The notes beneath the pieces were generated by a model. It made no database searches. It had not been told where the DNA came from and worked only from the letters and a program-made list of their open reading frames with translations. Shown piece after piece: positions 2,143-57,403 of a DNA stretch of 64,000 bases. Source of the DNA: Mustelus asterias (lineage: Eukaryota). The position numbers and the translations under genes are program-made. Location: positions 682,001 to 746,000 of the forward strand of contig NW_027590140.1 of assembly GCF_964213995.1 (NCBI RefSeq), written 5' to 3'. Positions within the stretch are counted from its first letter, which is position 1. Each line of letters begins with the position of its first letter.

Positions 2143-2183
<41 letters not shown>

Positions 2184-5100: not shown

Positions 5101-5195
5101 CTCCCTCTGCCTGCCTCGCTTTCTCTGTGACTGTTTGTCTCTCTCACCCTGTCTCTCCCCCCCCCCCCCCCGCCCCGCTGCCTCTCTCTCACGCT

Positions 5196-8600: not shown

Positions 8601-9945
8601 CCTGTCTCTCTCTCTCTCACACTCCCTGCCTCTCTCTCTATCCCTGCCTTTCTCTCTCACCGCCTCTTTCCGTCTCTCTCTCTCCCTCCCTGCTCCCCCC
8701 TCTCTCTCCCTGTCCCTCTCTCTCGCTGCCCCCTCTCTCGCTCTCCCTGTCCCACTCTCTCTCTCTCTTTCCCTGCCTCTCTCGTTCTCCCTGCCTCTCT
8801 CTCTATCTCACTTCCCGCCTCTCTCTCCCCCTGCCTCTCCCCCTGCCTCTCTCCCTGCCTTTCTGTCTCTCTACCTGCCTCTCTCTCTCCCTCTCTCTCT
8901 GCCTCTCTTCCTCTCTCTCCCTGTCTCTCTCTCTGTCTCTGCCTGCTTCTCCCTCTCACCCTGCCTCTCTCTCTCTCTCTCTCCCTGCCTTTCCCTCTCT
9001 CTCTGCCTGCCTCTCCCTCTCTCTCACGCTCTACCTGCCTGTCTCTCTCTCCCTGCCTTGCTCTCTCTCCCTGCTTCTCTCTCTCCTCCCCCCCCCCCCC
9101 CCGCTTCACTCCCTCTGTCTCTCTCTCTCTCTCTCTGCCTCTCTTTCTTTCTCCCTGCCTCTCTCTCTCCCTGCGACCCCCCCCCCCCTCTCTCCCTGCA
9201 TCGCTCTCTCTGTGTCTCTTTCTCCCTGCCTCTCTCTCTTCCGCTGTTTCACTCTCTCTCAGTTTCCTTCTATCTGTCTCCGTTGCTCTCCCTCTCTCTT
9301 TCTCTCTCTCTTTCTGTCTTTCTCTCTGTTTCTCTGTGTTTGTGTGTTTTTCTCTATCTATCTCTGTTTCTTTCTCCCTCTCTCTCTGTTTCTTTCTCCC
9401 TTTGCTGGCCCCCGCGTCAGTCTCCCTGTTTGTCTCTCTCTCTCTCTCTCTCTCTCTGTTGCTGTCTCTCTCTTTTGGCCTCTGCTTCTGTCTGCCCACG
9501 TCTCTCTGCTTGCCCTTCTGTATTAATTTGTTTCTCTCGACGAGTTTCTCTGCCATTTTGTTTCTTTCTATCTCTATTTCTGTTTCTCAATCTTTGTTGC
9601 TGCTTTTTCATCTCTCCTGTCTGTTTCCCTTTGTGTTCCTCTTTCTGTTACTCCTTCTCCCTTTCCCTTTCTGTTGTTGCTTTAACTCTGTTTCTCTCTC
9701 TCTCTTTGTCGTGGTCAGTTCCGAGAAGAATTTTGTGCTCTGGCGTCTATTTTGGTTTTGTGGATGTTATCAGCTGACACCTTTTCTCAGGAAGTGACCA
9801 AGTCTCAGATGCTATCGCAAGTTTCTGGAACAAACCCTTCAATTCTTGCACTGAACGGATTCAATTCGTCAGCAGTTTCTGAAGATTCTCTCAGCCTCGT
9901 TCGTCCATCATCTCTCTGCACCTTTCAATCCGCAGGAATCAACCA

Positions 9946-10003
9946 ATGGATCCAGTGTATGGAAATCTGTGGGGAACCATGATCCTGCTGTCACTGTGGA
10001 GTG
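9946..10003 (+). CDS. Exon 1 (signal peptide) of a single-Ig ITAM receptor gene
   Basis: ATG..MDPVYGNLWGTMILLSLWS-G|GTGAGT; phase-1 donor matches exon 2 and gives a plausible cleavage at TAG|E; ETS-type AGGAAGTG at ~9789. Confidence 0.65.
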
Positions 10004-10730
10004 GTGAGTGAGGGAGGGAGTGGTGAGTGAGGGAGGGAAAGAGTGACGGAGGGATTGGTGAGTGAGTTATACATAGAGGGAATGGAGTGAGTGAGGGAAC
10101 GATTGACGGAGGGACTGGTGAGTGAGTGAGGGAGGGAGTGGTGAGTGAGTGAGGGAGGGAATTGTGAGTGAAGAAGGGAGTTGTGAGTGAGGGAGGGAAA
10201 GAGTGATGGAGGGAGGGAGTGGTGAAGGGGTGAGGGGTAGAGTGAGGGAGGGACAGGGAAGAAGTGGTGAGTGAGTTATAGAGTGAGTAGTAAGGAAGGG
10301 AGTTTTGAGTGATGGAGGGGTGAATGAGGGAGACAGTGGTGAGGGAGGAAAGGAAGAAATTGGGAAGGGGTGTGAGTGAAGAGAGGGAGTAGGAGGAAGG
10401 GAGCGAGAGAGGATGAGTAAGAAAGAGGCATTGAGAGGGAGGGAGTCACAGAGAGATTCAGCAAAGGTGAGAGAGTGAGGGGAGGATGTGAGGTGAGAAA
10501 GTGATAAGATGGAGTGAACCACATCAATTGAATTAGGGCCTGAGAGAGAGGGAGTGGCAGAGGATGCGTGAGGAAGGGGTGTGTGAGAGAGGGTTACTGA
10601 GATGGAGAGTGACTATGATGGAGAGTGTCTATGATGGAGGGTGCCTGTGATGGAGGGTACCTGTGATGGACGGTGAGAGTGCGGGGGAGGGGGTGAGTGG
10701 AGAGGAGGGGGAGGACAGAGTGGTGAAGAA
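10004..10730. repeat. GA-rich (gtggtgagtgagggaggga)n low-complexity repeat
   Basis: Direct inspection; a similar tract lies at 11695-12290. Confidence 0.9.
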
Positions 10731-10739
10731 GGCATTCGG

Positions 10740-11370
10740 CATGCTTGGTTCCCTCGGTTAGACCAATGAATACAGTAGTTGGGACGTCTTGTTGAATTTG
10801 TACAAAACATTGGCAAGGCCATACTTGGAATACTGTGTACAGTTCTGGTCATCCTATTTCATAAAGGAGATTATTAAACTAGAAAGAATGTAGAAATAAT
10901 TTATTAGGATGTTACCAGGACTTAATGGTTTGAGTTATAAGGAGAGGCTGGATAGGCTGGGACATTTTTCCCTGGAGAGCAGGAGACTTAGGAGGACCTA
11001 GGGGTGAGAATAGAGGTCTATAAGATAATGAGGGCCATAGATCAGTTAGCTAATCAACATATTTTCCCAGAGGTAGGGGAAAACTAGAGGGCATAGGTTT
11101 AAGGTGAGAGGGGAGAGATACAAATTTGTCGAGAGGGGCAAGTTTTTCACAGAGGGTGGTGAGTGTCTGGAACAAGCTGCCAAAGATAGTAATAGAGACG
11201 GGTACAATTCTGTCTTTTAAAAAGCGTTCAGACAGCGACATGGGTAAGATGGGTCGACAGGGATATGGGCCAAATGCAGGTAATTGGGACTAGCTTAGTG
11301 GTTAAAAAAAAGGGTGGCAGGGACTAGTTGGGCAGAAGGGCCTGTTTCCATGCTATAAAGCTCTATGACT
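10740..11370 (+). mobile_element. Degenerate CR1 LINE 3' fragment
   Basis: RPYLEYCVQFWSS- and FTERVVSVWNKLP-like segments with stops. Confidence 0.85.
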
Positions 11371-11692
11371 TGGGCAGCACGGTAGCACAGTGGTTAGCAC
11401 TGCTGCTTCACAGCTCCAGGGTCCCGGGTTCGATTCCCGGCTCGGGTCACTGTCTGTGTGGAGTTTGCACATTCTCCTCGTGTCTGCGTGGGTTTCCTCC
11501 GGATGCTCCGGTTTCCTCCCACAGTCCAAAGATGTGTGGGTTAGGTTGATTGGCCAGGTTAAAAATTGTCCCTGAGATGTGTAGTTAGAGGGATTAGCGG
11601 GTAAATATGTGGGGGTAGAGCCTGGGTGGGATTGTGGTCGGTGCAGACTCGATGGGCCGAATGGCCTCCTTCTGCACTGTAGGGTTTCTATG
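11371..11692 (+). mobile_element. Full-length HE1-like tRNA-derived SINE
   Basis: A-box-like ggtagcacagtgg, B-box ggttcgattcc, core tgtggagtttgcacattctcc and a LINE-like 3' tail. Confidence 0.9.
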
Positions 11693-12632
11693 ACTCGAGA
11701 GTGCGGAGTGGTAGGATGAGGAAGGGGGTGAGGGCGTGTGAGGGCAGGGGCCGAGAGTGCGGGAAGAGGGTGAGTGTGGGGGAGAGGGGATGAGGGCGTG
11801 GGATGGCGTAAGTGCGGCGGAGGGCGAGTGTGCAGGAAAGGATGAGAGGGTGGGAGAAGGTATGAGAGGGAAAAGGTGTGAGTTGTGAGTGAGCACCAGC
11901 GTGAGTGAATGTGACTGAGCGAGAGGAACGGTGAGCCTGAAGGATGGTGTGAGTGTGAGGGAGAGTGTGTGAGGGAGAGGGAAGGGGAGAGTGTGGCAGA
12001 GGGGGTGAGTATGAAGGAGAATACACATGAGGAAGCAGGTGTGAAGGAAAGGATGTGAGGGAAGGAGAAGGTATAAGCAGGACAGGGTGCGAAGGTGGGT
12101 GTGATTGTGAGGGCGGGTGACGGTATAAGTGAGGGTGCATAAGGAGAGGGGGTGAGGGAGAAGGTGTGAGGGAGATAATGTGAGGGGGAGGTGGTGAGCT
12201 TGTGATGGAGGGTGCTTATATAGTAGAGGGTGTATGAAGGAGGGTGAGAGGGGTGTGTGTGAGTGTGAGGAAGGGTCTGAGTGTGAGGCAGTTGAGGACA
12301 GGCAGTACAAAACTGTTGAGCTTTTCAACATGATCTTGTCTACTTTGAGATCAAACATCATCTGCTCACCTTTTCCTGAAATCCCTTTGATTAAGACTTT
12401 AAAAACCCTCAGGCTCAATTTGAAATTCAGATTTGATGGCGTCTCATTTGTTGATTTTAGAAATATTTCTTATGTTTGCCTCTCATTGCTACAGCATAAC
12501 CCTAATCTTCTCAGTCAGATACTCAGAAACTGATCACCCCCTCCCTCAACCATCCCCCCACCACCTCCCCCCCCCCCCCCCCCCCCCCACCCCCCGCATA
12601 TCCCTTGATCCCTTGAGCTATATCTAATAACT

Positions 12633-13801
12633 CACGGGAGACTGCTGAGTAAAATAAGGGCCCATGGTATTCAAGGCAAGGTACTAACATGGATTGACGA
12701 TTGGCTGTCAGACAGAAGGCAGAGAGTTGGGATAAAAGGTTCTTTCTCAGAATGGCAACCGGTGACAAGTGGTGTCCCGCAGGGTTCAGTGTTGGGGCCA
12801 CAGCTGTTCTCTTTATATATTAACGATCTAGATGACGGGACTGGGAGCATTCTGGCCAAGTTTGCCGATGATACAAAGATAGGTGGAGGGGCAGGTAGTA
12901 TTGAGGAGGTGGGGAGGCTGCAGAAAGATTTAGACAGTTTAGGAGAGTGGTCCAAGAAGTGGCTGATGAAATTCAACGTGGGCAAGTGCGAGGTCGTACA
13001 CTTTGGAAAAAAGAATAGAGGCATGGACTATTTTCTAAACGGTGACAAAATTCATAATGCTAAAGTGCAAAGGGACTTGGGAGTCCTAGTCCAGGATTCT
13101 CTAAAGGTAAACTTGCAGGTTGAGTCCGTAATTAGGAAAGCAAATGTAATGTTGTCATTTATCTCAAGAGGCTTGGAATACAAAAGCAGGGATGTACTTC
13201 TGAGGCTTTATAAAGCACTGGTTAGGCCCCATTTGGAGTACTGTGAGCAATTTTGGGCCCCACACCTCAGGAAGGACATACTGGCACTGGAGCGGGTCCA
13301 GCGGAGATTCACACGGATGATCCCAGGAATGGTAGGCCTGACATACGATGAACGTCTGAGGATCGTGGGATTATATTCATTGGAGTTTAGGAGGTTGAGG
13401 GGAGATCTGATAGAAACTTACAAGATAATGAACGGCTTAGATAGGATGGACGTAGGGAAGTTGTTTCCATTAACAGGGGAGACTAGGACGCGGGGGCACA
13501 GCCTTAGAATAAAAGGGAGTCACTTTAGAACAGAGATGAGGAGAAATTTCTTCAGCCAGAGAGTGGTGGGTCTGTGGAATTCATTGCCACAGAGGGCTGT
13601 GGAGGCCGAGACGTTGAGCGTCTTCAAGACAGAAATTGATAAATTCTTGATTTCTCGAGGAATTAAGGGCTATGGGGAGAGAGCGGGTAAATGGAGTTGA
13701 AATCAACCATGATTGAATGGTGGAGTGGACTCGATGGGCCGAATGGCCTTACTTCCGCTCCTATGTCTTATGGTCTTATGGTCTTATGGTCTTATGGTCT
13801 T
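12633..13801 (+). mobile_element. Young 5'-truncated CR1 LINE (open RT C-terminal ORF 12762-13700) with (tcttatgg)n tail
   Basis: SGVPQGSVLGP and FADD RT motifs, uninterrupted 312-aa frame, 8-bp tandem tail; inserted in an older minus-strand CR1. Confidence 0.95.
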
Positions 13802-15050
13802 AACTTGAAATCACACAACGTTTTGGCCTTAACTCCTTGCTGTCACATTGAATTCCACAGATTCACCACTCTCTGGGTGAAGACATTTTTAATCACCTCA
13901 GTCTTAATCAGTTCATCCCTTATCCTCAAAGTACGATACCTAATTCTGGACTCCCCCGCCATTTAATAATTCCTATGAGATCCCCTCTCACTCTTCTAAA
14001 CCCCAGTGAATATAAGCGTAACTGATTTAGTCTCTCCTCACATGACGGACCTGCCACTCCAGGAATGAGCCTGGTAACCCTTTGCTGCTTGCCTCCTATA
14101 GCAAGGACACCCTTCCTCAGATACGGACACCAAAACTGCACACAATACTCCAAGTGTGGCCTCACCAACACCCGACACAATTGCAATAAAACATCCCAAT
14201 TCCGACACTCTTCTCTCTCGCTATGAAGTCCAACATACTATTTGCCTTCTTTACTGCCTGCTAAGTGCCTCAGTGTTTACTTTCGGCAACTGATGCACGA
14301 GGGCACCAAGGTCTCGGTGAGAATCCACCTCTCTCAATTTACAACCATTCAAACAATAATCTGTCTTCCTATTATTGCCACCAAAGTGGATAATCTCACA
14401 TTTGTCCACGTTGTACTGCATCTGCCATGCGTATGCGCACTCATTCAGCCTGTCCAAATCAGATTAAAGAATCCCTGCATCCTCCTCACAGCTCACCCTC
14501 CCACCATAATTTGTCATCTGCAAACTTGGAGCAAATACATTTCGTTCCCTCTTCCGAATCATCAATCTTTTATGTGAACAGTTGGGATCCCAACACCGAT
14601 CCCTGCAGTAGTCCACGAGTCACTGCTTGCCAATCGAAAAAAGACCCATTTATGCTAATTCTGTTTCCTGCCTGCTAACCAGCTTTCTATCTATCTCAAG
14701 ACACTAACTTGTTAAAAGCCTTCTGAAAGTCCAAATAAACCACCTTCTCTCGTTCTCCTCTACTAGTTACATTCTCAAATAATTCCAATAGATTCACCAA
14801 GCATGATTTCTCCTTTGTAAATAGATGCTGCATTGTCTGATTATACCACTGTTTTCCAACTGCTGAGTTTTGAAATACTTGATAAACGGACTCTCGCTAC
14901 TTCGCCAATACTGATGTCAGGCTCATTGGTCCATAGTACCCTGTTCTCTCTACCCCATTTTCTGAATCGTGGGCTTACATTATCTATCCTCCAATCTGCA
15001 GGAACCAGTCCGAGTCCAATGAACTGGAAAATGACACCAAATGTGTCCCT
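13802..15050 (-). mobile_element. Older degenerate CR1 LINE
   Basis: LVRPHLEYCVQFWCP and WQMQYNVDKCEIIHFG peptides on the minus strand. Confidence 0.88.
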
Positions 15051-15055
15051 ATTTC

Positions 15056-15700
15056 ATAGAATCACAGAATTCATACAGTTCTGAAGGAAGCCGTTTGGCC
15101 TATCGAGTTTGCACCGACCACAATGCCACCCAGACCCTATTCCCATGACCCCACATATTTACCCTGCCAATCCCCTGACACTCGGGTCAATTTAGTATGG
15201 CCAATCAACCTAATCTGCACGCGGCACGGTGGCACAGTGGTTAGCACAGCTGCCTCTCATCGCCAGGGATCTGGGTTCGATTCCTGGCTTGGGTCACTGT
15301 CTGTGCGGAGTCTGCACGTTCTCCCCGTGTCTGCGTGGATTTCCTCCAGGTGCTCCGGTTTCCTCCCACATTCCAAGCATGTGTGGGTTAGGTGGATTGG
15401 CCATGCTAAAGTGCCCCATAGTGTCAGAGGGACGAGCTTGGTTAAATACATGGGGTTACGGGGATAGAGCCTGGGTGGGATTGCGTTCCTTGCAGACTTG
15501 ATGGGCCGAATGGCCTCCTTCTGCACTGTTGGAACCTTTAACTCTGTAACTTTGGACTGTAGGAGGAAACTGGGGCACCCGGAGGAAACCCACGCAGACA
15601 CGGGGAGAACGTGTAAACTCTAAACAGACAGTGATCGAGGCTGGAATTAAAGCTCGAGCTTTGAGGCAACAGTGCTGACCACTGTGCCACCGTGCCACCC
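15056..15700. mobile_element. Nested HE1-like SINEs (+ copy 15221-15530 inside a minus copy)
   Basis: SINE head, core and tail recognisable in both orientations. Confidence 0.8.
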
Positions 15701-15729
15701 CCCTCTAGGGCTGTTCCGTTATGTACTCT

Positions 15730-18700
15730 GAGATGAAGATTATAAGGCCCCAGAGACCATTTTAGAAAGAGTGATGAGATCCTGCAGCAGTTTAGGGAGT
15801 TAGATAGAATGTTAAAAAGCAGGACCTCTAGGATTGTAATCTCAGGATTATTACCTGCGCTATGTACCAGTGAGGCGAGAAATTGGAAGGTAGTACAGCT
15901 CAACATGTGGCTCAACAACTGGTGGACGGGGAAGGGTTTCAGATATCTGGACCACTGGGATCTCTTACGGGACAGGTGGGATCTGTACAAGGACAGCTTG
16001 TATCTAAACTGGAGGGGCATTAATATTCTGACCGGGAGGTTTGCTAGTATCACACGGGAGGATTTAAAGTACTTTGGCAGGGGATAGGAACCAAAGCAAA
16101 GGTGAATTAACTTAAAGTAAAAGTTCATTTATTAGTCATAAATAAGGCTTACATTTACACTGCAATTAAGTGACGGTGAAATTCCCCTAGTCACCGCACT
16201 TGGCACTTGTTCGGATCAATGCACCTAACCAGCACGTCTTTCAGACTGTGGGAGGAAACCGGAACACCCTGAAAGAACCCACGCAGACATGGGGAGGACG
16301 TGCAAACTCCACACAGACAGTAACCCAAGAAGGCAATCGAACCCTGGTCCATCACGCTGGGAAGCAGCGGTGCTAACCACTGTGCCACCATGCCGCCCAC
16401 TTAAGGAGGACTGGAGAGTAGGTCCAGTAAAATTCAGAGAAAGAGCAGGCAGAGTGTGGTTGCTCATCAAAGAGGTTCTGGTGGACTGATGTACATTTGT
16501 TTCAATGCGGGAAGTGTAACAGGTAAGAACTTAGGGCTTGGATTAATACTTGGAATTATGATGTTGTTGCCATTAGAGACTTGGCTAAGGGAAGGACAGG
16601 ATTGGCAGCTTTCCGTTCCAGGATGCAGATGTTTTCAGTGGGATAGAGGGGGATCTAAAAGGGGTGGGGGAGTTACACTACTGGAGAATATCACAAATGT
16701 ATTGTGGGAGGACACCTCAGAGAGCTCATACAGCGAGGCAACATGGGTAGAGCTCAGGAATAGGAAGGGTGTAGTCACAACGCTGTGGGTTTACTGTAGT
16801 CCCCCTAAAAGCCAGCGACAGAGGAACAGATATATAGGCGGATTTTGGCAAGGTGCAAAAGTAACAGGGTTGCTGTGGAGGGAGATATTAACTTCCCCAA
16901 AATGACTGGGACTACTTAGTGCTCGCGACGTGGATGGGGCAGAGTTTGTAAGGCACATCCAGGAGGATGTCTTGAACTATTATGTCGATAGTCCAACTCG
17001 GGAAGGAGCCATACTGGACCTGGTATTGGGGAATGAGCCTGGCCGGGTGACGACGTTTCAGGAGGAGAGCAGTTTGGGAACAGTGACCACAATTCAGTAA
17101 GATTTAAGGTACTGATGGATAAAGATAAGTGTAGTCCTCAAGTGAAGGTGCTAAATTAGGGGAAGGCGAATTACAACATTATTAGGCAGGAATTGAAGAA
17201 TATAGATTGGGGCAGATATTTGAGGGCAAATAAATTTCTGACATGTGGAGGTTTTCAACTGCAAATTGGTAGGAATTCAGGACTGGCACATTCCTATAAG
17301 GCTGAAGGGTAATTATGGCAAGTTTCAGCAAACTTGGATAGTGAGAGATATTGTGAGCCTAGTCAAAGAGAAAAAAGGAAGCTCATGGTTCCTGTGGCGA
17401 TGACTCATGTTTCATTTCCTCACCCTGCACTATAAATATCTCTGACTTTCTATGTCTTTTAGCTTTGACAAAGGGTCATCTGGAGTCGAAACGTCAGCTC
17501 TTTTCTCTCCTTACAGATGCGGCCAGACCTGCTGAGATTTTCCAGCATGTTCTCTTTTGGCTGGAGAAAAAGGAAGCATTTGTCAAGGCTAGGAGATTGG
17601 GAACACACGAAGGAGAAGTGGAATACAAGAAAAGTAGCAAGAAGCTCAAGCAAGGAGTAAGGAGGGCTAAAAGGGGTAACAAAAAGTAATTGGCCAGCAG
17701 GATTAAGGAAAATCCTTTTTATGCATATATGAAGAGAAAGCAAGAAACCTGGAGGAGGACAGGGGAGGGGATCTATGCATGGAGCTGGAGGAAAAGAGGA
17801 AATGAGCGCGGTATTAAATGAATACTTTGCGTCAGTTTTCACAAAAGAGGAGGACTTGCTTAATGATGAGTCTGGGGAAGTGTGTGTAGATAGTTTGGGT
17901 CATGATGAGACCAAAAAGGAGGCAATATTGGGTTCTTGAGAAGCACTAAATTAGTCGAGTCCACGGGGCCTGATGGGAAACACTCCAGAATACTGAGAGA
18001 TGCAAGGCAGGAAACTGCTCAGGACTTGAGAGAAATCTTTGTATCCTCACTAGTACAGTGGAGGTCCCAGAAGATTGGATAACGTTGTTCCTTTGTTTAT
18101 GAAGGGTAGTAAGGATAAACCAGGTAATTAAAGGCCGGTGAGCCTTCAGCCAATGGTGGGGAAATTATTGGAGAGCATTCTTCGAGACAGGATTTACTCC
18201 CACTTGAAAATAAGTGGACGTATTAGTGAGTCACAACATGGTTTTGTGATGGGGAGGTCGTGTCTCACTTAGTTAATCGAGTTTTTCGAGGAAGTGGCGA
18301 AGATGATTGATGAGGGTAGGGCAGTGCATGTTGTCTACATGGACTTCAGTAAGGCCTTTGACAAGGTCCCTCATGGCAGACTGGTACAGAAGGTTAAGTC
18401 GCACGGGATCAGAGATCAGCTGGCAAGATGGATGCAGAACTGCCTCGGTCATAGAAGACAGAGGGTAGTAGTGGAAGGGTGCGTTTCTGAATGGAGGGCG
18501 GTGACAAGTGGCGTTCTTCAGGGATCAATGCTGGGACTTTTGATGCTTGTAATATATATAAATGATTTGGAGGGAAATGTAACTGGTTTGATTAGTAAGT
18601 CTGCAGACGATGCAAAGATTGGAGGAATTGTGGATCGCAGTGACGACTGTCAGAGGATACAGCAGGATATAGAATGGTTCGAGACTTGGGCGGTGAGATG

Positions 18701-21565
18701 GCAGATGGAGTTTAATGGACAAATGTGAGGTAATGCATTTTGGAAGTCTTATATAGATGGGAAAAATACAGTAAATGGCAGAACCCTTAAGAATATTGAC
18801 AGGCAGAGGGATCTGGGTGTGCAGATATCCAAGTCACTGAAAGTGGCAACGCAGGTGGAGAAGGTCGATGGAGACGGGAGAGGTGTAGGAGGATTGGAGG
18901 ATTGCGGATGTGGTTCCTATTTTCAAGAAGGGGAATAAGGATAGCCCAGGAAATAACCGACTGGTGAGTCTAACCTCAGTGGTTGGTAAGCTGATGGAGA
19001 AGATCCTGTGGGACAAGATTAATGAGCATTTAGAGAGGTTTAGTATGCTCAAGAATACTCAGCATGGCTTTGTCAAAGGCAGATCGTGCCTTACGAGCCT
19101 GGTGGAGTTCTTCGAAAATGTGACTAAACACATTGACGAAGGGAAAGCGGTAGATGTGGTTTATATGGATCTTAGCAAGGCGTTCGATAAGGTTCCCCAT
19201 GAAAGGGTTCTAGAAAAAGTGAGAGGGCATGGGATCCAAGGGGCTACTGCCCTGTGGATCCAGAACTGGCTTGCCCAGAGGAGGCAGAGAGTGGGTACAG
19301 ATGGGTCTTTTTCTAAATAGAGGTCGGTCACCAGTGGTGTGCCCCAGGGATCTGTTCTGGGACCCTTGCTGTTTGTCATTTTCATAAATGACCTGGATGA
19401 GGACGTGGAGGGATGGGTTGGTAAGTTTGCCGACGACCCAAAGTTTGGTGGGGTTGTGGATAGTCTGGAGGGATGTCAGAAGTTACAGAGGGACATAGAT
19501 AGGATGCAAGACTGGGTGGAGAAGTGGCAGATGGACTTCTACCCAGATAAATGCATAGTGGTCCATTTTGGCAGGTCAAATGGGATGAAGGAGTACAATA
19601 TAAAGGGAAAAACTCTTCGTACTGTAGTGGATCAGAAGCCTGGGGTCCGGGTCCATAGGACTCTAAAATCGGCCCCAGAGGTGGAGGAGGTGGTTAAGAA
19701 GGAGTATGGTGTGCTGGCTTTATCAATCGAAGGATTGAGTTTAGGAGTCCGGGGATAATGATGCAGCTATATAAGACCCTCGTCAGTCCACACTTGGAGT
19801 ACTGTGCTCAGTTCTGGTCGCCTCATTATAGGAAGGATGTGGAAAAGATTGAAAGTGTGTAGAGGAGATTTAGAAGGATGTTGCCTGGATTGACTGGCAT
19901 GCCTTATGAGGATAGGCTGAGGGAGCTCGGTCTTTTCTCCTTGGAGAGACGTAGGATGAGAGGAGACCTTATAGAGGTGTATAAGATGTTGAGAGGCATA
20001 GATCGAGTGGACTCTCAGAGGCTTTTTCTCAGGGTGGAAATCTCTGCTACGAGAGGACACAGGTTTAAAGTGCTGGGGGGTAGGTACAGGGGAAATGTTA
20101 GGGGGAACTTTTTCACACAGAGGGTGGTGGACGAGTGAAATCGGCTGCCGTCAGTGGTGGTGGAGGCAAACTCAATAGGGTCTTTTAAGAGACTCCTGGA
20201 TGAGTACATGGGACTTAATGGGATGGAGGGTTATAGGTAGGCCTAGAAGGTAGGGATATGTTCGGCACAACCTGTGGGGCCGAACGGCCTGTTTTGTGCT
20301 GTAGTTTTATATAAGGTAGTCAAGAATGCATACAGCATGCTTGCCTTCATCGGCCGGGGCATTGAGTTTAAAAATTGTCAAGTCATGTTGCATCTTTATA
20401 GAACCTTAGTTAGGCAGCACTTGGAATATCGTGTTCAATTCTGGTCTTCACGCTACCAGAAGGATGTGGAGGTTTTGGAGAGGGTGCAGAAGAAATTTCA
20501 TAGAATAGAATGCCTGCAGTGCAGAAGGAAGCCATTGAGAGCATCAGGTCTGCCACCGACCACAATCCCACCCAGACCCTATTCCCCTCATCCTTCATAT
20601 TAACCTTGCTAATTCCCCTGACCAGAGTGTCAATTTACCATTGCCAATCAACATAACCCGCACATCTTTGGACTGTGGGAGGAAGCGGAACATCCGGAGA
20701 AAACCCATGCAGACATGGGGAGAACGTGCAAACTCCAAACAGACAGTTACCCGAGGCCAAAATTGAACCCGAGTCCCTGGCGCTATGAGGCAGCAATGCT
20801 AACCACCGTGCCACCAACCTTTTTTTATAATACTGGTTCAGTTCATCTACTATCTCCTTATTGTTTTGTTTTCAACTCCCCAGACATACTTTCTATAGGA
20901 CCAATGCTCACTTTGTTGACTTTTCTTTTTTAAGTATCTGTGGAAATTGTTACATTATATACTACATTTCAATTTCTCATATTCCTCGATAACTTTCTCT
21001 CATTCTCCCTCTTTATTAATCTTTTTGTCATTCTTTGCTGTCTTTATCCTATCCTATCCTATCCTATCCTATCCAATCTTCTTACCTGCCACCCTTTAAC
21101 CAGGATGTTGCCAGGTATGCAGGACATTAGCTGTGAGCAGAGGTTGGAGAATCTTAGTTTGTTCTCGCTGGAACGACAAACGTTGAGCGGGCGAACTGAT
21201 CAACCTCTCCAAGATTATGAAGGGGGACAGAATGGATAGTCAGACGCTATTTTCCCACAGTAGAAGAGTCAATTACTCGGGGGCATAGGTTTAAGTTGCG
21301 AGGGGCAAGGTTTAAAGGCGATGTATGAGGCACGTGCTTTGCACAGAGGGTGGTGGGTGCCTGGAACTCGCTGCTGGGGAAGGTAGTGGAAGCAGATACG
21401 ATAGTGACTTTTAAGGGGCATCTTGCCAAATACATGAATAAGATGGGAATACAGCGATAAGGTTCCCAGAAGGATAGGGGGCTTTAGTTCAGTCGGGCAG
21501 CATGGTCGGTGCAGGCTTGGACGTCCGAAGGGCCTATTCCTGTGTTGTAATTTTCTTTGTTCTTT
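15730..21565 (+). mobile_element. Long degenerate CR1 LINE with SGNH-esterase-like ORF1 and APE/RT ORF2, carrying nested SINEs, a Penelope fragment and a younger CR1
   Basis: ORF1 fragment RIVISGLLP..LNMWL..LYLNWRG (15809-16087); APE motifs ETWL and DLVL; RT YMDFSKAFDKVPH (18294-18728); continues at 20313-20500 and 21100-21565. Confidence 0.85.
18864..20312 (+). mobile_element. Younger CR1 nested in the older CR1
   Basis: Highly similar to 60611-62070; host frame resumes after it; AAGGT at 18861-18865 and 20313-20317 looks like a TSD. Confidence 0.85.
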
Positions 21566-21699
21566 GTTCAATCCCATTATTTTCCCCCAAACCATTTCGC
21601 TATTAATACTGATTTCCTTCAGCACTTCATTAAAACTTGTTTCTCTCAGAGCTTTTGGTACATTATTCATGTCTTCCTTTGTGAAGACAGACCCACCAT

Positions 21700-22190
21700 C
21701 AGGCACAAGTCAGGAGTATGATGGAATAGTCTGCTCTTGCCTTGGTAAGTGCAGCTCCATCAACACCCATGAAGCTCTACACGGCCAAAGATAAAGCAGC
21801 CCTTCCAATAACATTCACTCCTTCCACCACTGACGCACAGTGGCAGCCATGAGTAGCCTCTACGCGATGCACTGCAGGAACTCACTGAGATTCCTTCGAC
21901 AGCACCCTTCAATTGCACGACCTCTACCATCTAGAAGAGTAGCAGAAAGACCGCCACCTGGAGGTTCCCCTCCAAGTCACTCAGCATCCTGACTTGGAAA
22001 TATATCACTGTTCCTTCACTGTCGCTGTGTCAAAATCCTGAAACACCCTCTCGAGCAGCACTGTGGGTATACCTACATCACGGGGACTGACGCGGTTCAA
22101 GCTCACCACCACCTTCTCAAGACCAATTAGAGATGGTCAACAAATGCTGTTCCAGCCTGCGACACCCACATCTTGTGAGAGAATAAAAAT
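21700..22190 (+). mobile_element. L2/CR1-group LINE 3' fragment
   Basis: QAQVRSMME and IHSFHH*RTVAA-like ORF2 tail; a related minus copy lies near 52780-53150. Confidence 0.6.
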
Positions 22191-22243
22191 AGATCTTTGC
22201 TTGCAGCCCGCTGCTCGAGTTACGAATCTCTTTTTCACACTAG

Positions 22244-22543
22244 GTACTGCTGGAGAGCTGCAGGTTTGCCTCGAGAGAAAGCAGCCCAGCAGTGGGACAT
22301 GCAAAGTGGAACTGATGTGTTCCAGCGTGCGTGACTCGGCTGTTGAGTGGTTCAGAGGGAACAAGAAGGTTATCAGTGATCAGAGGCATGAGCTGCAGTT
22401 TGGTGGGATGATTTTGGATGTCACACTCGATTCCCAGCTTGGAGAGACGGTTTATAAATGCAAGGAAGCAGCAGGAGGAGTCGAGCAGACTGTTGATTTG
22501 GGAGCAACCTGTGGCTACAGCAACACTATCAAAATTCTACCAG
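22244..22543 (+). CDS. Exon 2: C2-set Ig domain, CD2/SLAM membrane-proximal-like
   Basis: Pyrimidine-rich TAG acceptor and CAG|GTAAC donor, 300 bp, phase 1-1; GTCKVELMCS..VEWF..YKC..LGATC, with 46 aa between the canonical Cys pair plus a second Cys pair. Confidence 0.85.
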
Positions 22544-22819
22544 GTAACAACTATCATTTTACTACATCTCAAATGCATGGACAAATCCTTGCTATTCAGT
22601 GACGTTACCCACACTGAATCCTCCCCCGCCCCCATGTCCTGGGGGTTGATGATCAATTCTACCACTGTCACTGGAATATATTCTGCGTCATGATATATGG
22701 AAGGATACTGCTCAGACACTCTGAAGCCGTCTTGTATCAATTAACTCGCCTCCTAACTCCCCAAAATCTGTCCACCATCTGGGAGGCACAACATCAGGAG
22801 TGTGAATGTTTTTTTTCAT

Positions 22820-23120
22820 TCATACACACATACTCATGCACGCACACACACAGACCCGTGCACGCACGCACATATACACACACACACATACACAAACACA
22901 ATCACGCGAGCGCACACACAAACACACATGCATGTGCAGACGTAAACAAACACACGTANNNNNNNNNNNNNNNNNNNNNNNNNNNNNNNNNNNNNNNNNN
23001 NNNNNNNNNNNNNNNNNNNNNNNNNNNNNNNNNNNNNNNNNNNNNNNNNNNNNNNNNNNNNNNNNNNNNNNNNNNNNNNNNNNNNNNNNNNNNNNNNNNN
23101 ACGCACTCACACACACTCAC
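22820..23120. repeat. CA-rich microsatellite with N gap
   Basis: Direct inspection; similar tracts at 50075-50405 and 50935-51210. Confidence 0.95.
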
Positions 23121-23529
23121 AGACAGTGGAATTTGTATTCAATAACAAAAATCTGGATTTAAGAATCTACTAATGGCCATGAAACCATTGTTGGAAATGG
23201 TTGGATTCACTACTGTCCGTTAGGGAAGAAAATCTGCCGTCCTTACCCTGACTGGCCTACCTGTGAATCGAGCGACAGCAATGTGGTTGACTCTCAACTC
23301 CTGTCAGAAATAGCCCAGCGAGACTCTCAATTTTAACAATCACTATGGCATTGTGGATCACACAGCACGAGGACTGCAGCGTTTCAAGAAGGCAGCACAC
23401 ACGCTGACACATATGCACACACAAGTGTACGCATACACACAAGTGCACACGCACTGCATGTGAGAGAATGTCCTGCTGTTGCAATTTGCTATTGAACGAC
23501 TCTCTTTCTCCATAATGTTCTATTTACAG

Positions 23530-23640
23530 ATATTTCCTCAGTTCAGTACCAGAAAGTGAAGATTATTCTCACTGCGATTTTCTTGGCAGTTTATACGGCA
23601 GCTTTACTGATCACCTTCTATCTATGCCATCAGGAGAACA
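23530..23640 (+). CDS. Exon 3: stalk plus transmembrane segment
   Basis: tttacag acceptor, phase 1; DISSVQYQKVK-IILTAIFLAVYTAALLITFYLC-HQEN; donor is non-consensus GTTAAG, and read-through gives AGT TAA. Confidence 0.75.
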
Positions 23641-23721
23641 GTTAAGTATTGGGTCTGTTCTCATAGCAGCAAACAATCTCCTCTTAATCCCAGAATGCTT
23701 CCCGAACACTGAGTGTCAGAG

Positions 23722-24125
23722 GGCATGGATCTCGCATTGGGGGTGTGAGTGACAGGGGACCTCGCACGAGAGTGTGAGAGACAGGGGATCTCACACTGGG
23801 GGTGTGAAAGACAGGAGATTTCGCATTGGCGGTGTGAGGGACAGGGGATCTCGCCTGGGGATGTGAGAGACAGGGGATCTCGCACGAGGGTGTGAGAGAC
23901 AGGGGAATTCACACTTAGGGTGTGAGAGAGCGGATCTCACATTGGGGGTGTGAGGGACAGGGGAACTCGCACTGCGAGTGTGAGAGACAGGGGGTCTCGC
24001 AATGGGGGTGTGAGAGACAGGGGGTCTCGCACCGGGGGTGTGAGAGACCGGAGATTTCGCACTGGGGTGTGAGAGACAGGAGATCTCGCACTGGTGCTGT
24101 GCGGCAAAGAGGGAATCTCGCACTG
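23722..24125. repeat. ~30-bp minisatellite (gggatctcgcactgggggtgtgagagaca)
   Basis: About 13 degenerate tandem copies. Confidence 0.92.
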
Positions 24126-24256
24126 GAACTGGGGTTTTAGTGGGAGAGGAAGGGAGGGTGGCAGCAGAGGGAGAGAGTGGGGAGAGGGAGGGAGTGATAA
24201 CAGAGACTCAATATCACCTGATACTGACTTTCTCTTATTTTGCTTCTTGTGTCTAG

Positions 24257-24289
24257 GCAACAGTGAAAAGAAAAGGAGACATAACCAAG
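24257..24289 (+). CDS. Exon 4: short basic juxtamembrane exon
   Basis: ttcttgtgtctag|GC..NSEKKRRHNQ G|GTAGGG, 33 bp, phase 1-1. Confidence 0.65.
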
Positions 24290-24399
24290 GTAGGGGTTCA
24301 ATCTAGCCGGTACCCCGAAAGTGTCTGACTGGCGAACAAACTGCTGTCCATTACTGTGGGTAGGAGGAGGTCAGGACCTTTCTGCCAGCACAACGGTGA

Positions 24400-24985
24400 C
24401 TGTTTGATGGGGGACAGTGTCGAGGGAGTTTTACTCTGTATCTAACACCGTGCTGTACCTGTCCTGGAAGTGTTTGATGGGGGTTCGTGTGGAGGAAGTT
24501 GTACTCTGTCTCTAATCCTGTGCTGTACCTGTCCTGGAAGTGTTTGATGGCGGATAGTAGAGATGAAGGTTTACTTTGTATCGATCCCTGTGCTGTACCT
24601 GTCCTGGGAGTGTTTGATGGGGATAGTGTAGAGGGAGATTTTCTCTGTATGTAACCCCGTCCCGTACCTGTCCTGGGAGTTTTTGATGGGGACAGTGTAC
24701 AGGGAGCTTCACACTCTATCTAACCCTGTGCTATACTTGTCCTGGGAGTGTTTGATGGAGACAGTGTAGATCGAGTTTTACTCTGTATCTAACCCTGTGC
24801 TGTACCTGTCCGGAGAGTGTTTGATGCGGACAGTGTGGAGGGAGTTTTAATCAGTATCTAACCCTGTGCGGTACCTGTCCTGGGAGTGTTTGATGGGGAC
24901 TGTGTACACGGAGATTTATTCTGTCCCTAACCTCGTGCTGTACCTGTTCGGAATATTTGATTGTGGGGCAGTGTAACAGGGAGTA
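24400..24985. repeat. ~69-70-bp satellite (gtgtttgatggggacagtgtagagggag...gtacctgtcctggga)
   Basis: About 8 head-to-tail copies with no unique spacers. Confidence 0.93.
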
Positions 24986-25728
24986 TTTTATTTGTTAAGA
25001 TCACTGAATGTAATTTTATCATTTTGGAGATGCTCAGACTGTCTCTGTGTTAATCTGCCTCCCGATCTCCCTTGCCTGGAGATTTGTCAAACAGGCGGGC
25101 ACAGGAATCAGCTCGAAACCCATGTTTGCCTCTTTTACACAAGCATTTGGTGTACTAGAGTGAGGTATTCTTGTTATAGCTACTTTGGTACTGTCACACC
25201 TGGAATACTGCGAACAGTTTTGGTCTCCTTGCCGAATTAACTTACCTTCGAGCGAGACAGAAAAAATCATTTTGCTGCTGATTCCTGGGCTGAGGGATAT
25301 TGGCTGATGTGAGATTAGTATTCTGGAAGCTAATCGTTTGAGAGGTGATCTGTTTGAAACGTACACAGATCTCTCACAGTTTCAAGTGCAACCTACTTAC
25401 TGGATGTTTTCCCCGGTTGCGGAGTCTGGGACATGGGGGTCACGGTTTCAGGCTAAGAGATCAAATTTGATACTTTTCAGTCAGAGAGTGGTAAGTCTTT
25501 GAAATTCTCTACCCAGAGAGTGGTAGATGATCTGTCCTTGAGTAGATTCAAGAGAGCAGTTGAGAGATATTTGGGCATTTTCTAAAAGAGAATGGCGAGT
25601 GGAGTGGAGAATAGAGTTGATAGGATCAGCATAATAATGCCACAGCACGAGAACCAAGCTCGCTGCATCCAACTACTTCTTGTTCTTATGTTTCTTTTTC
25701 CACTGAAATTGATCTTTCCTCTTTGCAG

Positions 25729-26377
25729 GGGAAGAAGGAATTTACTCTGATCTGCTAAGTCCTGGAAGTCAATCTGACACCAAAGAGCAAGCCCAGTCCA
25801 TTGGCCAATGGGTGCAGGGCAGGCCAAAGGGGTCTTCGCAACTGACAGTGGAGGTCGAGGCTGGTCCTGCTGCAGGCCTCAGAATGCAGGCTGTGGCTGG
25901 GCCTAGCACAGGCTCAATAAGAGAGCAGGCCGAGGCTGGGCCTGCTGCAAGCCTCGTAAGGCAGGATGAGGTTGGGCCTAGCACAGGCTCAATAAGCGAG
26001 CAGGCTGAGGCTGTGCCTGCTGCAAGCCTCAGAATACAGGCCGAGTCTGGGCTCGTTCAGGCTCAATAAGAGAGCAGGCCGAGGCTGAGCCAGCTGCAAG
26101 CCTCCAAAGGCAGGATGAGGCTAAGCCTAGCACTCCCCAGATGGTTCCAGTACAAGATTCAACATACACAAGCCTGAAGAAACGACCAAAGGATGCTGAC
26201 TACCAACTCCTCAGACGACAGATACCCAATGATCAAAGTGCAGTAACATATTCAGCAGAAGCTGAGGAGGTGACACTTAAGACAACATCGCAAGGCAACA
26301 AGATAGATTTGGGAACTGAGACAATTACAAATTCACTCCCAGCATATTCTACATTTAAGCCACTCGAAAACCATTGA
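25729..26377 (+). CDS. Exon 5: cytoplasmic tail with YxxL motif, tandem repeats and ITAM (1-bp frameshift near 26051-26060)
   Basis: ctctttgcag acceptor, phase 1; EEGIYSDL; repeats; frame stops at 26069, while the next frame gives DSTYTSLKKRPKDADYQLL and ends TGA 26377. Spliced CDS is 280 aa as written, 383 aa with one base restored. Confidence 0.72.
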
Positions 26378-42995: not shown

Positions 42996-43646
42996 CTGAA
43001 GTTACAGTCACCTTGGGGTCCCCTGTCCCCAGGATCCATGGTAACCACTGCTATCTTTTGCACAGTAATAGATGGCGGTGTCTTCGCTCTTGAGGCTCCC
43101 CATGTCCAAAGCGAAGATATTGTTTGAAATGTTTTTGCTCGCAATAAATCGATTCTGAATCGCAGTGGCGTATTCCCTGGTCGATAAACTAAAGTAGTAA
43201 ATCAACAATTCCAACCCCTGTTGCGGAACCTGTCGGATCCAGTGCATGCCGTCGCTTCCAAGATCGAAGCCGCTCGTATTATAGGTCAGTCTCAGGCAGC
43301 CTCCGGGATGCCCGACCGCTGCCTCGGACTGACACAACACAACATCCGACTGGACACCTGTAAAAATATATCACATGAGTCATTCAAAAAAACACAAAAC
43401 AGAATCCACCCAAACACATTTCAGTGAATTAATCAATTATTAAAATAGTTCAAAATGTAAAACAGACTCAGAAAAAGTGACTTAATAAATGGCCCCGAGG
43501 ACTAATCTTTGTCAAATAATTGCTGACTCTGGAATATTCCAGAGATAGACTAACACTGACACAGTGACATTGAGAGACTTTGACAATAAAAACTACTCAC
43601 CCGACAAGAAAGCCAGCAGCAAAATAATATAAATCGCCGCGCTCAT
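42996..43646 (-). pseudogene. Germline-joined IgM-type heavy chain VH-D-JH (leader 43601-43646; VDJ exon 42996-43357)
   Basis: Leader MSAAIYIILLLAFLS|GTGAGT; [13 protein letters not shown](C>Y)[37 protein letters not shown], frameshift, then (K)VTVTS G|GTAAG; no RSS between V and J. Confidence 0.93.
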
Positions 43647-55926: not shown

Positions 55927-56216
55927 ATGTGGCTCATGCAGATACTGTGACTCAGTCGCTCTCGTCAGATGCAAAGACAGAAGGAGAAGTGGTGACTTTA
56001 AACTGTAGCTATGAGACTGCAATGAGCGGCTATATGTTACATTGGTACCGACAGTATCGAAACACACAGCCCGAGTTTGTACTGCTGAAGGCCAGTAATA
56101 ATTATGAAGAGAAAGCAGATTTTGCGGAAACACGTTTTTCCGTGGAGCTCCAGATCGCGACTAAATTCACCAGTTTGACTATCTCGAGTTTGCAGCTGAC
56201 AGACGCTGCCGTATAC
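55927..56216 (+). pseudogene. TCR alpha/delta-type V segment truncated just before the second Cys, no RSS
   Basis: DTVTQ..VTLNCSY..LHWYRQY..RFSVEL..TSLTISSLQLTDAAVY, then unrelated sequence. Confidence 0.9.
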
Positions 56217-57403
56217 AAAGATACCTCAACCCCGTTTGTTGTTAAACATTGACAGAAACAAATTATCTCACAGCGTAACTACATTTATTCTTACCCAAGC
56301 ATTAAATGATATTCTGCAAAATTTTCAGTCACGAGGACAGACGGAAGAATTGGCGCAAATTTAACTTTATGACTCAAATGTTAGATCAATTCCTGTGCCG
56401 CATGAATAAGGGTTTCAGCCGAATTGGACTTCCACAAAACAGGCTCTGAAGTTCAATCAGACAGCACTGTTGGTCCTTCCAGACCAGTCGCTTTTATCCT
56501 GAGCGGAATTTCTGGACTGAATGGATTACGACATTCAGTTTATATTTGCAGAGGTCCCAGTTCTAAACAGGGCAGAAACATTATCAACATTCACTGCCCT
56601 GACGGTTCTGAATTCAAGTTTATTGTTGAATGTGAATGGAACCGAGTATCAATCAAAATATTGAAGATTTACTCTTCACTATTTCTGAGAAAACACACAG
56701 CAAAATCACCAGTGCTTTCAGCTGGCAAGCGGTGTTTGGACAGTGGGAGGCTGGAATATTGCTGCTTTTCCCTGTTTCACACGCTGTAGAATGAGGAAAA
56801 GACAATAATTAAAGGGTTCGTTAGAATTGAATAATTGAATGGATTTCTAATGGGTTCGAGGCAGACACAATTTAAGGCTAATAGTCGCAGAACACCCATT
56901 GGAGGCACATACATGGCACCAGGAATCAGCTCTCCTATAACCGGTGCCGTCTCCCTTTAAGCCTTTCTGTGTCTTGTCTGTAAACAAATATTCGGACTGT
57001 CCCGAAGCTGCTTTTAGGTAGAATTCCTGATGTGCTGGAACGAGAATATTTTCAATATCTCCGAACAGTTACTTTCACTGCCAACGTCAGAGTCAATGTT
57101 CCAGTTTCATAAAAACGGGAAAGGTGCCTTGACTGTCTCTGCTCAGTCAGACAGTTCACCCTTCATTCTCCTGTGATTCCGGTTCCCAAAGAGTTTCTAA
57201 AAAATCATAACTTTGACAGCCATAATAAAAAATCTCTTGAAAACAATGTAAGTTTGCTATCGATGCTGGTATAATATTTCTGTTTCCACATTTATTCTTT
57301 TAGTTAGATTTTCTCAATGTTTTTACTGGCTACGGTTGTGAGTTTGGAATTCGCCCCGATACTGAACCCAACACGGTATCTCACGGCCCTCTGCTGGGGT
57401 GAC

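What the first reader, a model, noticed from the sequence alone, without database searches (positions are those of the whole stretch)
9946..26377. Hidden five-exon single-Ig receptor with its own ITAM next to TCR V segments
Seen: five exons (58, 300, 111, 33, 649 bp), all joined in phase 1, give signal peptide + C2 Ig domain + uncharged TM + basic juxtamembrane stretch + long tail with EEGIYSDL and a canonical ITAM, D-S-T-YTSL-x8-YQLL. The ORF track misses the gene because introns are TE-filled. Established: CD2/SLAM receptors are V+C2 and signal via ITSMs or proline-rich motifs; most activating Ig receptors borrow ITAMs from adaptors through a charged TM residue. Inference: an adaptor-independent activating IgSF receptor of cartilaginous fish, linked to the TCR V array and possibly undescribed.
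Basis: partly seen in the sequence, partly recalled or inferred. Interest (0 to 1): 0.87.

Follow-up and report, generated by a model that had tools for sequence, protein, structure and literature searches.

The report
Shark SLAM-like receptor gene, ITAM frameshifted
The five-exon immune-receptor gene is real and belongs to a shark-and-ray family of one-domain SLAM-like receptors that normally carry their own activation motif, but this copy has lost one base and stops before that motif.

Summary
The five exons are real. Three junctions appear in spliced contigs of two runs. All exon translations occur in order in RefSeq XP_078058725.1, Mustelus asterias LOC144484031, "uncharacterized protein", 280 aa. 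The assembly gap lies inside intron 2 and is spliced out.

The last exon is not one reading frame. The third copy of a 75-bp coding repeat has 74 bases, giving TAA at 26067-26069. The ITAM (26165-26212) is out of frame. This copy encodes 280 aa without an ITAM, not 383 aa.

The family claim holds. Eleven M. asterias loci exist, 7 long with an ITAM and 4 truncated. An ITAM is present in 8 of 9 shark and ray species.

The Ig-TM module is homologous to the C2 domain of shark SLAM-like receptors (hhalign 96.5%, E 8e-10). It has no V domain and no ITSM.

No paper was found. Unchecked first-reader notes report similar genes beside TCR V clusters on other pieces of this genome.

Verdict: a new variant of a known kind, already annotated but unnamed.

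The parts
9946..10003 (+). Exon 1: start codon and signal-like peptide MDPVYGNLWGTMILLSLWS plus 1 base. Donor is G|GTGAGT.
   Evidence: It equals residues 1-19 of P0043 and is 85% identical to the N-terminus of catshark P0027.
10004..22243 (+). Intron 1, 12,240 nt, filled with retroelement debris.
   Evidence: 4 of 5 ORFs tested match Pfam RVT_1. tblastn with shark SLAM-like proteins found no V-domain relic.
22244..22543 (+). Exon 2: one C2-type Ig domain with cysteines C-x5-C...C...C plus one extra N-terminal Cys.
   Evidence: It equals residues 21-119 of P0043.
22959..23100 (.). Assembly gap (N) inside intron 2 (22544-23529), flanked by CA-rich simple sequence.
   Evidence: Spliced contigs of X3 and X5 join 22543 to 23530 directly.
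23530..23640 (+). Exon 3: stalk and uncharged transmembrane helix. Donor is GTTAAG.
   Evidence: It equals residues 121-156 of P0043.
24257..24289 (+). Exon 4: 33-nt basic juxtamembrane cassette (SNSEKKRRHNQ).
   Evidence: The exon is absent from isoforms P0034 and P0004.
25729..26069 (+). Exon 5, translated part: EEGIYSDL, then Ala/Pro/Gln-rich repeats, ending ...ESGLVQAQ and TAA.
   Evidence: It equals residues 169-280 of P0043.
25852..26133 (+). 75-bp coding tandem repeat, 3.8 copies. The third copy (26007-26080) has 74 bases because one base is missing within 26050-26059.
   Evidence: TRF. Copies printed in register. Contigs carrying one extra base at 26051 or 26054 are.
26072..26377 (+). 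Former tail, now out of frame and part of the 3' untranslated region. It holds the ITAM YTSLKKRPKDADYQLL at 26165-26212 and VTYSAEAEEV.
   Evidence: It is 91% identical over 77 aa to the tails of the long paralogues.
55929..56252 (+). Neighbour: TCR alpha/delta-like V segment.
   Evidence: Pfam V-set 2.2e-13. The best natural matches in PDB are TCR alpha and delta V domains, around 1e-14.
43008..43340 (-). Neighbour: VH-like V domain with a joined ...YYCAK...WGQGT end.
   Evidence: Pfam V-set 1.4e-11. The best PDB matches are antibody heavy-chain V domains.

Best explanation
The window carries Mustelus asterias LOC144484031. It is one of at least 11 paralogues of an elasmobranch-only family of type I membrane proteins.

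The family's build is: signal peptide, one SLAM/CD2-type C2 Ig domain with no V domain, a short stalk with a conserved Cys, an uncharged TM, an optional 11-residue basic cassette, and a long disordered tail. The tail holds a membrane-proximal IYSDL, a variable number of 25-residue repeats, a canonical ITAM and a C-terminal TYSA..EEV.

In the long forms, tyrosine phosphorylation of the ITAM would recruit a Syk/ZAP-70-type kinase directly, without a charged-TM adaptor. This step is inferred.

The copy in this window is a short form. One base is missing from the third repeat copy, so translation ends at 26069. The product of 280 aa keeps the ectodomain, the TM and the IYSDL motif but lacks the ITAM. 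It can therefore at most bind what the long forms bind and signal weakly or not at all, acting as a decoy or modulator, or it is on its way to becoming a pseudogene. This too is inferred.
For: Gene model.

Splicing: three joints with GT..AG ends appear in X3 and X5. Intron bins there have zero depth.

Identity: all five exon translations sit at residues 1-19, 21-119, 121-156, 158-167 and 169-280 of the 280-aa P0043, which is XP_078058725.1.

The frameshift is real. Ungapped contigs across 25926-26086 occur in X1 (1 difference) and X3 (2 differences). The same ...ESGLVQAQ end is annotated at two more loci, P0036 and P0037.

Family size: 7 long and 4 short loci in M. asterias.

ITAM: present in 18 of 25 family proteins retrieved and in 8 of 9 species with a tail sequence. 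Pfam ITAM PF02189 matches 2 of 14 members, best 1.8e-5.

SLAM link: after the family itself, phmmer lists ray 'HEPACAM2-like' and Heptranchias 'Ly-9-like / SLAMF5-like' proteins at 2e-9 to 3e-7 in 1.84 billion proteins. BLASTP to P0041 gives 7e-8. hhalign gives 96.5%, E 8.3e-10, over C2, stalk, TM and juxtamembrane region. The ESM Atlas nearest clusters are SLAMF7 (0.94) and SLAMF8 isoform 2 (0.93).
Against: The spliced contigs differ from the window: 9 of 298 letters (X3), and 11 of 255 plus 8 of 114 (X5). At 23634 all runs read another letter. The contigs may therefore come from paralogues or from another individual or species, and expression of this exact locus is not shown.

Run kinds are coded. 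RNA is inferred from the splicing and from the empty introns.

Contigs with one extra base at the frameshift site exist: +C at 26051 in X1 (49 of 116.7) and X5 (210 of 210), and +A at 26054 in X3 (17.4 of 28.3) and X4 (4.05 of 4.05). An intact allele of this locus cannot be excluded.

No signalling experiment exists. Heterodontus lacks the second ITAM tyrosine. Human or mouse SLAM/CD2 structures did not appear in the PDB sequence searches at E up to 10.
Confidence: 0.62

Rival explanations
1. This copy is a dying duplicate. The family expanded recently in the houndshark lineage. Several copies, including this one, have lost the ITAM tail by random mutation and have no function of their own, even if they are still transcribed.
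For: 4 of 11 M. asterias loci are truncated before the ITAM, by at least two independent events. P0038 ends at ...GSI and groups with a long-form clade at 99/98 support. The Mustelus copies form one young clade with short branches. The locus is full of retroelements. In the window the old tail frame runs about 30 codons past the point where the long forms stop.
Against: The Ig, TM and proximal tail are intact and 100% identical to an annotated model. The stop is in the last exon, so the mRNA should escape nonsense-mediated decay. Short-form exon 5 contigs are present in the spliced run X3. The same frameshifted end is kept at three loci.
Confidence: 0.24
2. The frameshift is an assembly or consensus error in a tandem repeat. 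The locus then really encodes the reader's 383-aa receptor with its ITAM.
For: Tandem repeats are error-prone. Contigs with one extra base at 26051 or 26054 exist in all four runs. The downstream frame is open and its ITAM is identical to that of the long paralogues.
Against: Ungapped, near-identical contigs across the site occur in a DNA-like run (X1) and in a spliced run from another sample (X3). Two further annotated loci end with the same ...ESGLVQAQ. The contigs with an extra base may be from paralogues: those carrying +A behind 26054 would read GPSSG, as in the long forms P0032-P0034, if the two letters before the insertion also differ. That is my alignment of the long forms' sequence; one search did not list those two differences.
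Confidence: 0.07
3. The family is not a ligand-binding receptor. It is a CD3/CD79-like signalling subunit that pairs, through its single Ig domain and stalk cysteine, with another chain, possibly one encoded nearby in the TCR locus.
For: It has a single small Ig domain, a conserved stalk Cys (TCG) and its own ITAM. The weak best Pfam match is Ig_4, the CD3 delta domain, in 8 of 14 members. It sits inside or next to a TCR V array.
Against: All Ig_4 matches are far below the cut-off (best 0.01 to 0.069 against 30.1 bits). The TM has no acidic or basic residue. The ITAM lies in one exon rather than being split. Significant homology is to SLAM-like C2 domains.
Confidence: 0.07

Closest known systems
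SLAM/CD2 family receptors, here shark and ray 'SLAMF5-like / Ly-9-like / HEPACAM2-like' predicted proteins P0041, P0014, P0006 and P0012
   Same: The membrane-proximal C2 domain shares the C-x5-C...C...C cysteine pattern and the W(F/W)RG and H.L motifs. The stalk Cys, the TM and the Y.C(R/H) juxtamembrane stretch are also shared. All introns are phase 1. Homology is significant.
   Different: There is no N-terminal V domain in any of the 25 family proteins. No ITSM (TxYxxV/I) occurs in any tail. Instead there is an ITAM plus IYSDL and TYSA..EEV. The gene sits beside TCR V segments.
ITAM-bearing Ig chains CD3 gamma/delta/epsilon and CD79a/b
   Same: One Ig domain, a stalk cysteine, and an ITAM in the chain's own tail.
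   Different: The Pfam Ig_4 match is below threshold. There is no charged TM residue. The ITAM is not split by an intron. The tail is long and repeat-rich.
Allergin-1 (MILR1), an ESM Atlas look-alike
   Same: It is a small Ig receptor with tyrosine motifs in its tail. Feature score is 0.92.
   Different: This is only a language-model resemblance. No alignment or E-value was obtained, and it was not tested further.
Paired activating/inhibitory receptor families (KIR, LILR, NITR; recalled, not from a call)
   Same: A multigene family with near-identical ectodomains and tails that differ in signalling capacity, here long with ITAM against short without.
   Different: The short forms arise by truncation, not by a switch to ITIM tails or to charged-TM adaptor use. 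No ITIM is conserved.

Membership tests
SLAM/CD2 family | Membrane-proximal C2-set Ig domain homologous to that of family members | tested here: met
   phmmer to the Heptranchias Ly-9-like/SLAMF5-like cluster gives 3.2e-7, and to ray HEPACAM2-like proteins 2.4e-9. BLASTP gives 7e-8. hhalign gives 96.5%, E 8.3e-10. The link is to predicted shark and ray proteins named automatically. Solved mammalian SLAM/CD2 chains did not match at E up to 10.
SLAM/CD2 family | N-terminal V-set domain that binds the ligand | tested here: not met
   The leader exon is followed directly by the C2 exon in P0043 and in all full-length homologues. tblastn with four V-C2 shark or ray proteins hits only exon 2 in the window.
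SLAM/CD2 family | ITSM (TxYxxV/I) in the cytoplasmic tail (SLAM subfamily) | tested here: not met
   A regex over 25 family proteins and both window tail frames found no hit in any tail. The only 2 hits lie inside the TM of P0035 and P0047.
SLAM/CD2 family | Position in the conserved SLAM/CD2 gene cluster | not testable with these tools
In the window the neighbours are V segments and a 7TM gene, not SLAM genes.
ITAM-bearing receptors | YxxL/I-x6-8-YxxL/I in the translated cytoplasmic tail | tested here: not met
   This holds for the window's product: the ITAM at 26165-26212 is out of frame behind TAA 26067-26069. The feature is met in 18 of 25 family proteins, including 7 of 11 M. asterias loci.
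ITAM-bearing receptors | Recruitment of Syk/ZAP-70 after tyrosine phosphorylation | not testable with these tools
   This needs a binding or signalling experiment.
CD3/CD79 signalling subunits | CD3-type Ig domain (Pfam Ig_4) above threshold | tested here: not met
   E = 0.01 and 16.8 bits against a 30.1-bit cut-off for exon 2. 8 of 14 members match, best 0.069, all below the cut-off.
CD3/CD79 signalling subunits | Charged or strongly polar TM residue for assembly, and an ITAM split by an intron | tested here: not met
   The TM IILTAIFLAVYTAALLITFYL has no D, E, K or R. The ITAM lies wholly in the last exon.

The most novel reading that the evidence does not exclude
An elasmobranch-wide, V-less offshoot of the SLAM/CD2 family carries its own ITAM. 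In houndsharks it has been amplified together with TCR alpha/delta V cassettes into a paired system. Long ITAM forms are autonomous activating receptors or TCR-locus-linked signalling chains. Recurrently truncated short forms, such as this gene, act as ITAM-less decoys. This would be a non-rearranging activating receptor family embedded in an antigen-receptor locus.
Probability: 0.15. Interest if true: 0.75.

Novelty: new variant of a known kind. Interest (0 to 1): 0.45.

Why it matters
Mammalian SLAM/CD2 receptors signal through ITSMs and SAP adaptors, and they bind ligand with a V domain. A lineage at least as old as the shark-ray split that kept only the C2 domain and acquired its own ITAM shows another way of wiring this receptor family. 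The expansion to 11 loci in one houndshark, with long and truncated tails, gives a natural series for asking what the ITAM adds. If the paralogues really sit among TCR alpha/delta V segments, as unchecked notes on other pieces of this genome suggest, the family would also bear on how non-rearranging immune genes are co-amplified inside antigen-receptor loci.

For annotation, the practical point is that this copy must not be reported as ITAM-bearing.

Tried and rejected
Paralogues inside the window: tblastn of the five exon pieces found none beyond the gene's own repeat copies.

V-exon relic in intron 1 or elsewhere: none at E up to 5.

CD3/CD79 kinship: only sub-threshold Pfam Ig_4 matches, no charged TM residue, and the ITAM is not split. 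Rejected as membership.

PDB sequence searches with exon 2 and with the family profile gave only weak myomesin, obscurin, titin or VEGFR2 Ig matches, with E of 0.004 or more. These are uninformative.

Tail-only search (P0032 residues 158-355) found only the family itself, 9 proteins. No V-C2 protein with this tail was seen, but only the 8000 candidates sharing most words were scored.

The search with ray protein P0007 added only Hypanus sabinus LOC132395789. Nothing was found outside elasmobranchs. All word-indexed searches are limited in reach and by length window, so absence elsewhere is not shown.

Literature: five searches covering shark + ITAM + IgSF, SLAM family + shark, six LOC/XP identifiers (0 papers), shark TCR delta locus + SLAM, and SLAM family + cartilaginous fish. 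I saw listings and abstract starts only. For PMC10322711 I read four passages; none was relevant. Supplements were not opened; scRNA-seq marker tables of shark lymphocyte papers could list these LOC genes.

Structure prediction and fold search were not possible. Synteny in other species was not possible.

The spliced model was never joined. Every search used single exons or database proteins, and lengths were summed arithmetically.


Full report
**The gene model.**
- Exon 1, 9946-10003: ATG, 19 codons plus one base, donor GTGAGT.
- Exon 2, 22244-22543.
- Exon 3, 23530-23640: donor GTTAAG.
- Exon 4, 24257-24289.
- Exon 5, from 25729.

Each acceptor is AG behind a pyrimidine tract, and each intron splits a codon after its first base. 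In 23660-25700 there are 5 open 33-nt stretches bounded by AG and GT. Intron 1 is 12,240 nt, and 4 of 5 ORFs tested there are reverse-transcriptase fragments, so the remark about TE-filled introns holds.

**The assembly gap.** The N run 22959-23100 lies inside intron 2 (22544-23529). Spliced contigs of two runs join 22543 to 23530 with nothing in between. The annotated protein also runs from ...KILP straight to D-ISS.... The gap therefore does not affect the frame or hide an exon of the main isoform. I did not try to fill it.

**The last exon.** The frame fixed by the acceptor reads EEGIYSDLLSPGSQ... and ends at TAA 26067-26069. The ITAM (DSTYTSL-KKRPKDAD-YQLL, tyrosine codon at 26165) is in another frame, which is open from 26072 to the stop at 26375-26377. 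The cause is visible in a 75-bp coding tandem repeat (25852-26133, 3.8 copies, 80% matches). Copies 1 and 2 have 75 bases. Copy 3 (26007-26080) has 74, with one base missing within 26050-26059. The coding length as assembled is 843 nt, which is 280 aa plus stop.

**Reads.** One run search and one lay (4,351 letters; runs X1, X3 and X4 of organism A, X5 of organism B; all Logan contigs; 90% likeness) gave the following.
- X3 and X5 hold the three joints 22543>23530, 23640>24257 and 24289>25729. All three have GT..AG ends.
- X3 and X5 have zero depth in unique intron bins, so they behave as RNA. X1 and X4 cover introns and show none of these three exon-exon joints, so they behave as DNA.
- An X3 contig of 367 letters lies on 22243-22540 from its 27th letter. 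The acceptor at 22244 is therefore used, but the 26 upstream letters were not shown.
- At the frameshift, contigs without any gap cross 25926-26086 in X1 (1 difference) and X3 (2 differences).
- Other contigs there carry one extra base: +C behind 26051 in X1 (49 of 116.7) and X5 (210 of 210), and +A behind 26054 in X3 (17.4 of 28.3) and X4 (4.05 of 4.05).

Caveat: the spliced contigs differ from the window by 3-7% (9 of 298 letters in X3; 11 of 255 and 8 of 114 in X5). At 23634 every run reads another letter. They may therefore stem from paralogues or from another individual or species. The junctions are confirmed for the gene family at these very positions, not strictly for this locus.

**Identity.** I searched exon by exon and never joined the model.
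- phmmer of exon 2 against 1.84 billion representatives gave 26 hits at E up to 0.001.
- The top ones are 'uncharacterized' proteins of Scyliorhinus canicula, Heterodontus francisci, Rhincodon typus, Stegostoma tigrinum, Mobula and Narcine.
- A profile search added Scyliorhinus torazame and many Mustelus asterias loci. Cluster look-up brought the M. asterias count to 11 loci, 5 of them on one 20.43-Mb contig.
- One of them is P0043 (XP_078058725.1, LOC144484031, 280 aa, on a 1.408-Mb contig). It contains the five exon translations at 1-19, 21-119, 121-156, 158-167 and 169-280.

The window is therefore almost certainly M. asterias, and NCBI already annotates exactly this five-exon, 280-aa short form.

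**The family.**
- Of the 11 M. asterias loci, 7 are long (319-355 aa, ITAM YTSLK(K/E)RP(K/N)DADYQLL) and 4 are short.
- Three short loci end ...ESGLVQAQ: this one, LOC144487169 and LOC144480759. One, LOC144481071, ends ...GSI.
- On a tree of the N-terminal 170-176 residues the Mustelus copies form one clade (96/97 support). This shows expansion after the split from catsharks.
- The ...GSI form groups with a long-form clade (99/98), so truncation happened at least twice.
- A complete ITAM is present in 18 of 25 family proteins retrieved (isoforms and one 93-aa fragment included) and in 8 of 9 species with a tail. Rays have two. Heterodontus lacks the second tyrosine.
- IYSDL/IYSHV near the membrane and (T)YSA..EEV at the end are also conserved.
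- Exon 4 is a cassette: isoforms P0034 and P0004 lack it.
- Nothing was found outside elasmobranchs, within the limits of those searches.

**Relationship to known families.**
- After the family itself, phmmer lists ray 'HEPACAM family member 2-like' and Heptranchias 'Ly-9-like / SLAM family member 5-like' proteins, which are V-C2 or V-C2-C2 receptors.
- Exon 2 aligns to the C2 domain of P0041 (BLASTP 7e-8).
- The family profile aligns to its C2, stalk, TM and juxtamembrane region (hhalign 96.5%, E 8.3e-10). The shared features are the C-x5-C...C...C cysteines and the W(F/W)RG motif.
- ESM Atlas neighbours are SLAMF7, SLAMF8 isoform 2 and allergin-1 (leads only).
- The defining V domain and the ITSM are absent.
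- CD3-type Ig_4 matches stay below threshold.

I file the family as a V-less, ITAM-bearing variant related to SLAM/CD2 receptors, not as a member in the full sense.

**Context.** Downstream lie:
- a leader plus V-like ORF (40314-40568, weak);
- a VH-like joined V domain (43008-43340, minus strand);
- an intact 321-aa rhodopsin-type 7TM ORF (48604-49569);
- a V segment whose best natural PDB matches are TCR alpha and delta V domains (55929-56252).

Linkage to a TCR V array is thus true for this locus. First-reader notes on other pieces of this genome (s1-891374, s1-894056, s1-891860) describe similar genes beside TCR V clusters.

**Mechanism.**
- Shown: the architecture, the splicing, the truncation and the conservation of the ITAM.
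- Inferred for the long forms: they signal by Src-kinase phosphorylation of their own ITAM and recruitment of Syk/ZAP-70, without a charged-TM adaptor.
- Inferred for the ectodomain: the C2-only ectodomain, with an extra N-terminal Cys in sharks and a stalk Cys, may dimerise or pair with another chain.
- Inferred for the short form here: it keeps only the YSDL motif. It is a decoy or modulator, or a decaying copy. Its stop lies in the last exon, so its mRNA should not be degraded by nonsense-mediated decay (established rule, not tested).

**Limits.** Run identities are coded. Papers were seen as listings, abstract starts and four passages only, and supplements were not opened.

Noticed in passing
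window 24290-25019 (intron 4): A run of roughly 70-nt tandem units, whose translations repeat ...YSVSNPVLYLSWECLMG.... Summed contig depth is 1e4 to 3e6 in all four runs, against about 100 in the flanks, with many internal joints. It looks like a very high-copy satellite or SINE-like repeat.
   Followed up: no
window 23700-24150 (intron 3): A second tandem array, whose translations repeat ...GVRDRGSRTGGV.... Its depth is ordinary.
   Followed up: no
window 48604-49569 (+): An intact, intronless 321-aa rhodopsin-family 7TM receptor ORF (Pfam 7tm_1, 8.6e-20) sits between V segments. Its subfamily was not determined.
   Followed up: partly
window 43008-43340 (-): A VH-like V domain ending ...[18 protein letters not shown], that is, germline-joined. 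Its best PDB matches are antibody heavy-chain V domains. This is the same feature as first-reader note s1-894079.
   Followed up: partly
window 40314-40568 (+) and 55929-56252 (+): The first is a leader plus partial V-like ORF (Pfam V-set only 0.024). The second is a clear TCR alpha/delta-like V segment (V-set 2.2e-13; PDB TCR alpha/delta around 1e-14). Recombination signals were not examined.
   Followed up: partly
window 1-9900: Strongly CT-rich, strand-skewed simple sequence (GC skew down to -0.8) with five N gaps: 3155-3343, 3388-3556, 6919-7047, 8216-8345 and 8407-8534. It lies directly upstream of exon 1, so the promoter region is poorly assembled.
   Followed up: no
P0029, P0004 (Stegostoma) and P0003 (Rhincodon), alignment A1 columns 43-100: The orectolobiform members lack both canonical Ig cysteines: the B-strand Cys is deleted and the F-strand Cys is replaced by Gly. 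They keep the other cysteines. This makes an Ig domain without its core disulfide.
   Followed up: no
window 62612-63897 (-): Two adjacent ORFs of 252 and 176 aa, the second with a CCHC zinc-knuckle-like CHNCGKLGHFARDC. They look like a retroelement gag.
   Followed up: no
window 26279-26377: In the old tail frame the window reads on for about 30 codons past the place where the long M. asterias forms end (...VTLKTTL stop). This fits a tail region that is no longer translated in this copy.
   Followed up: partly
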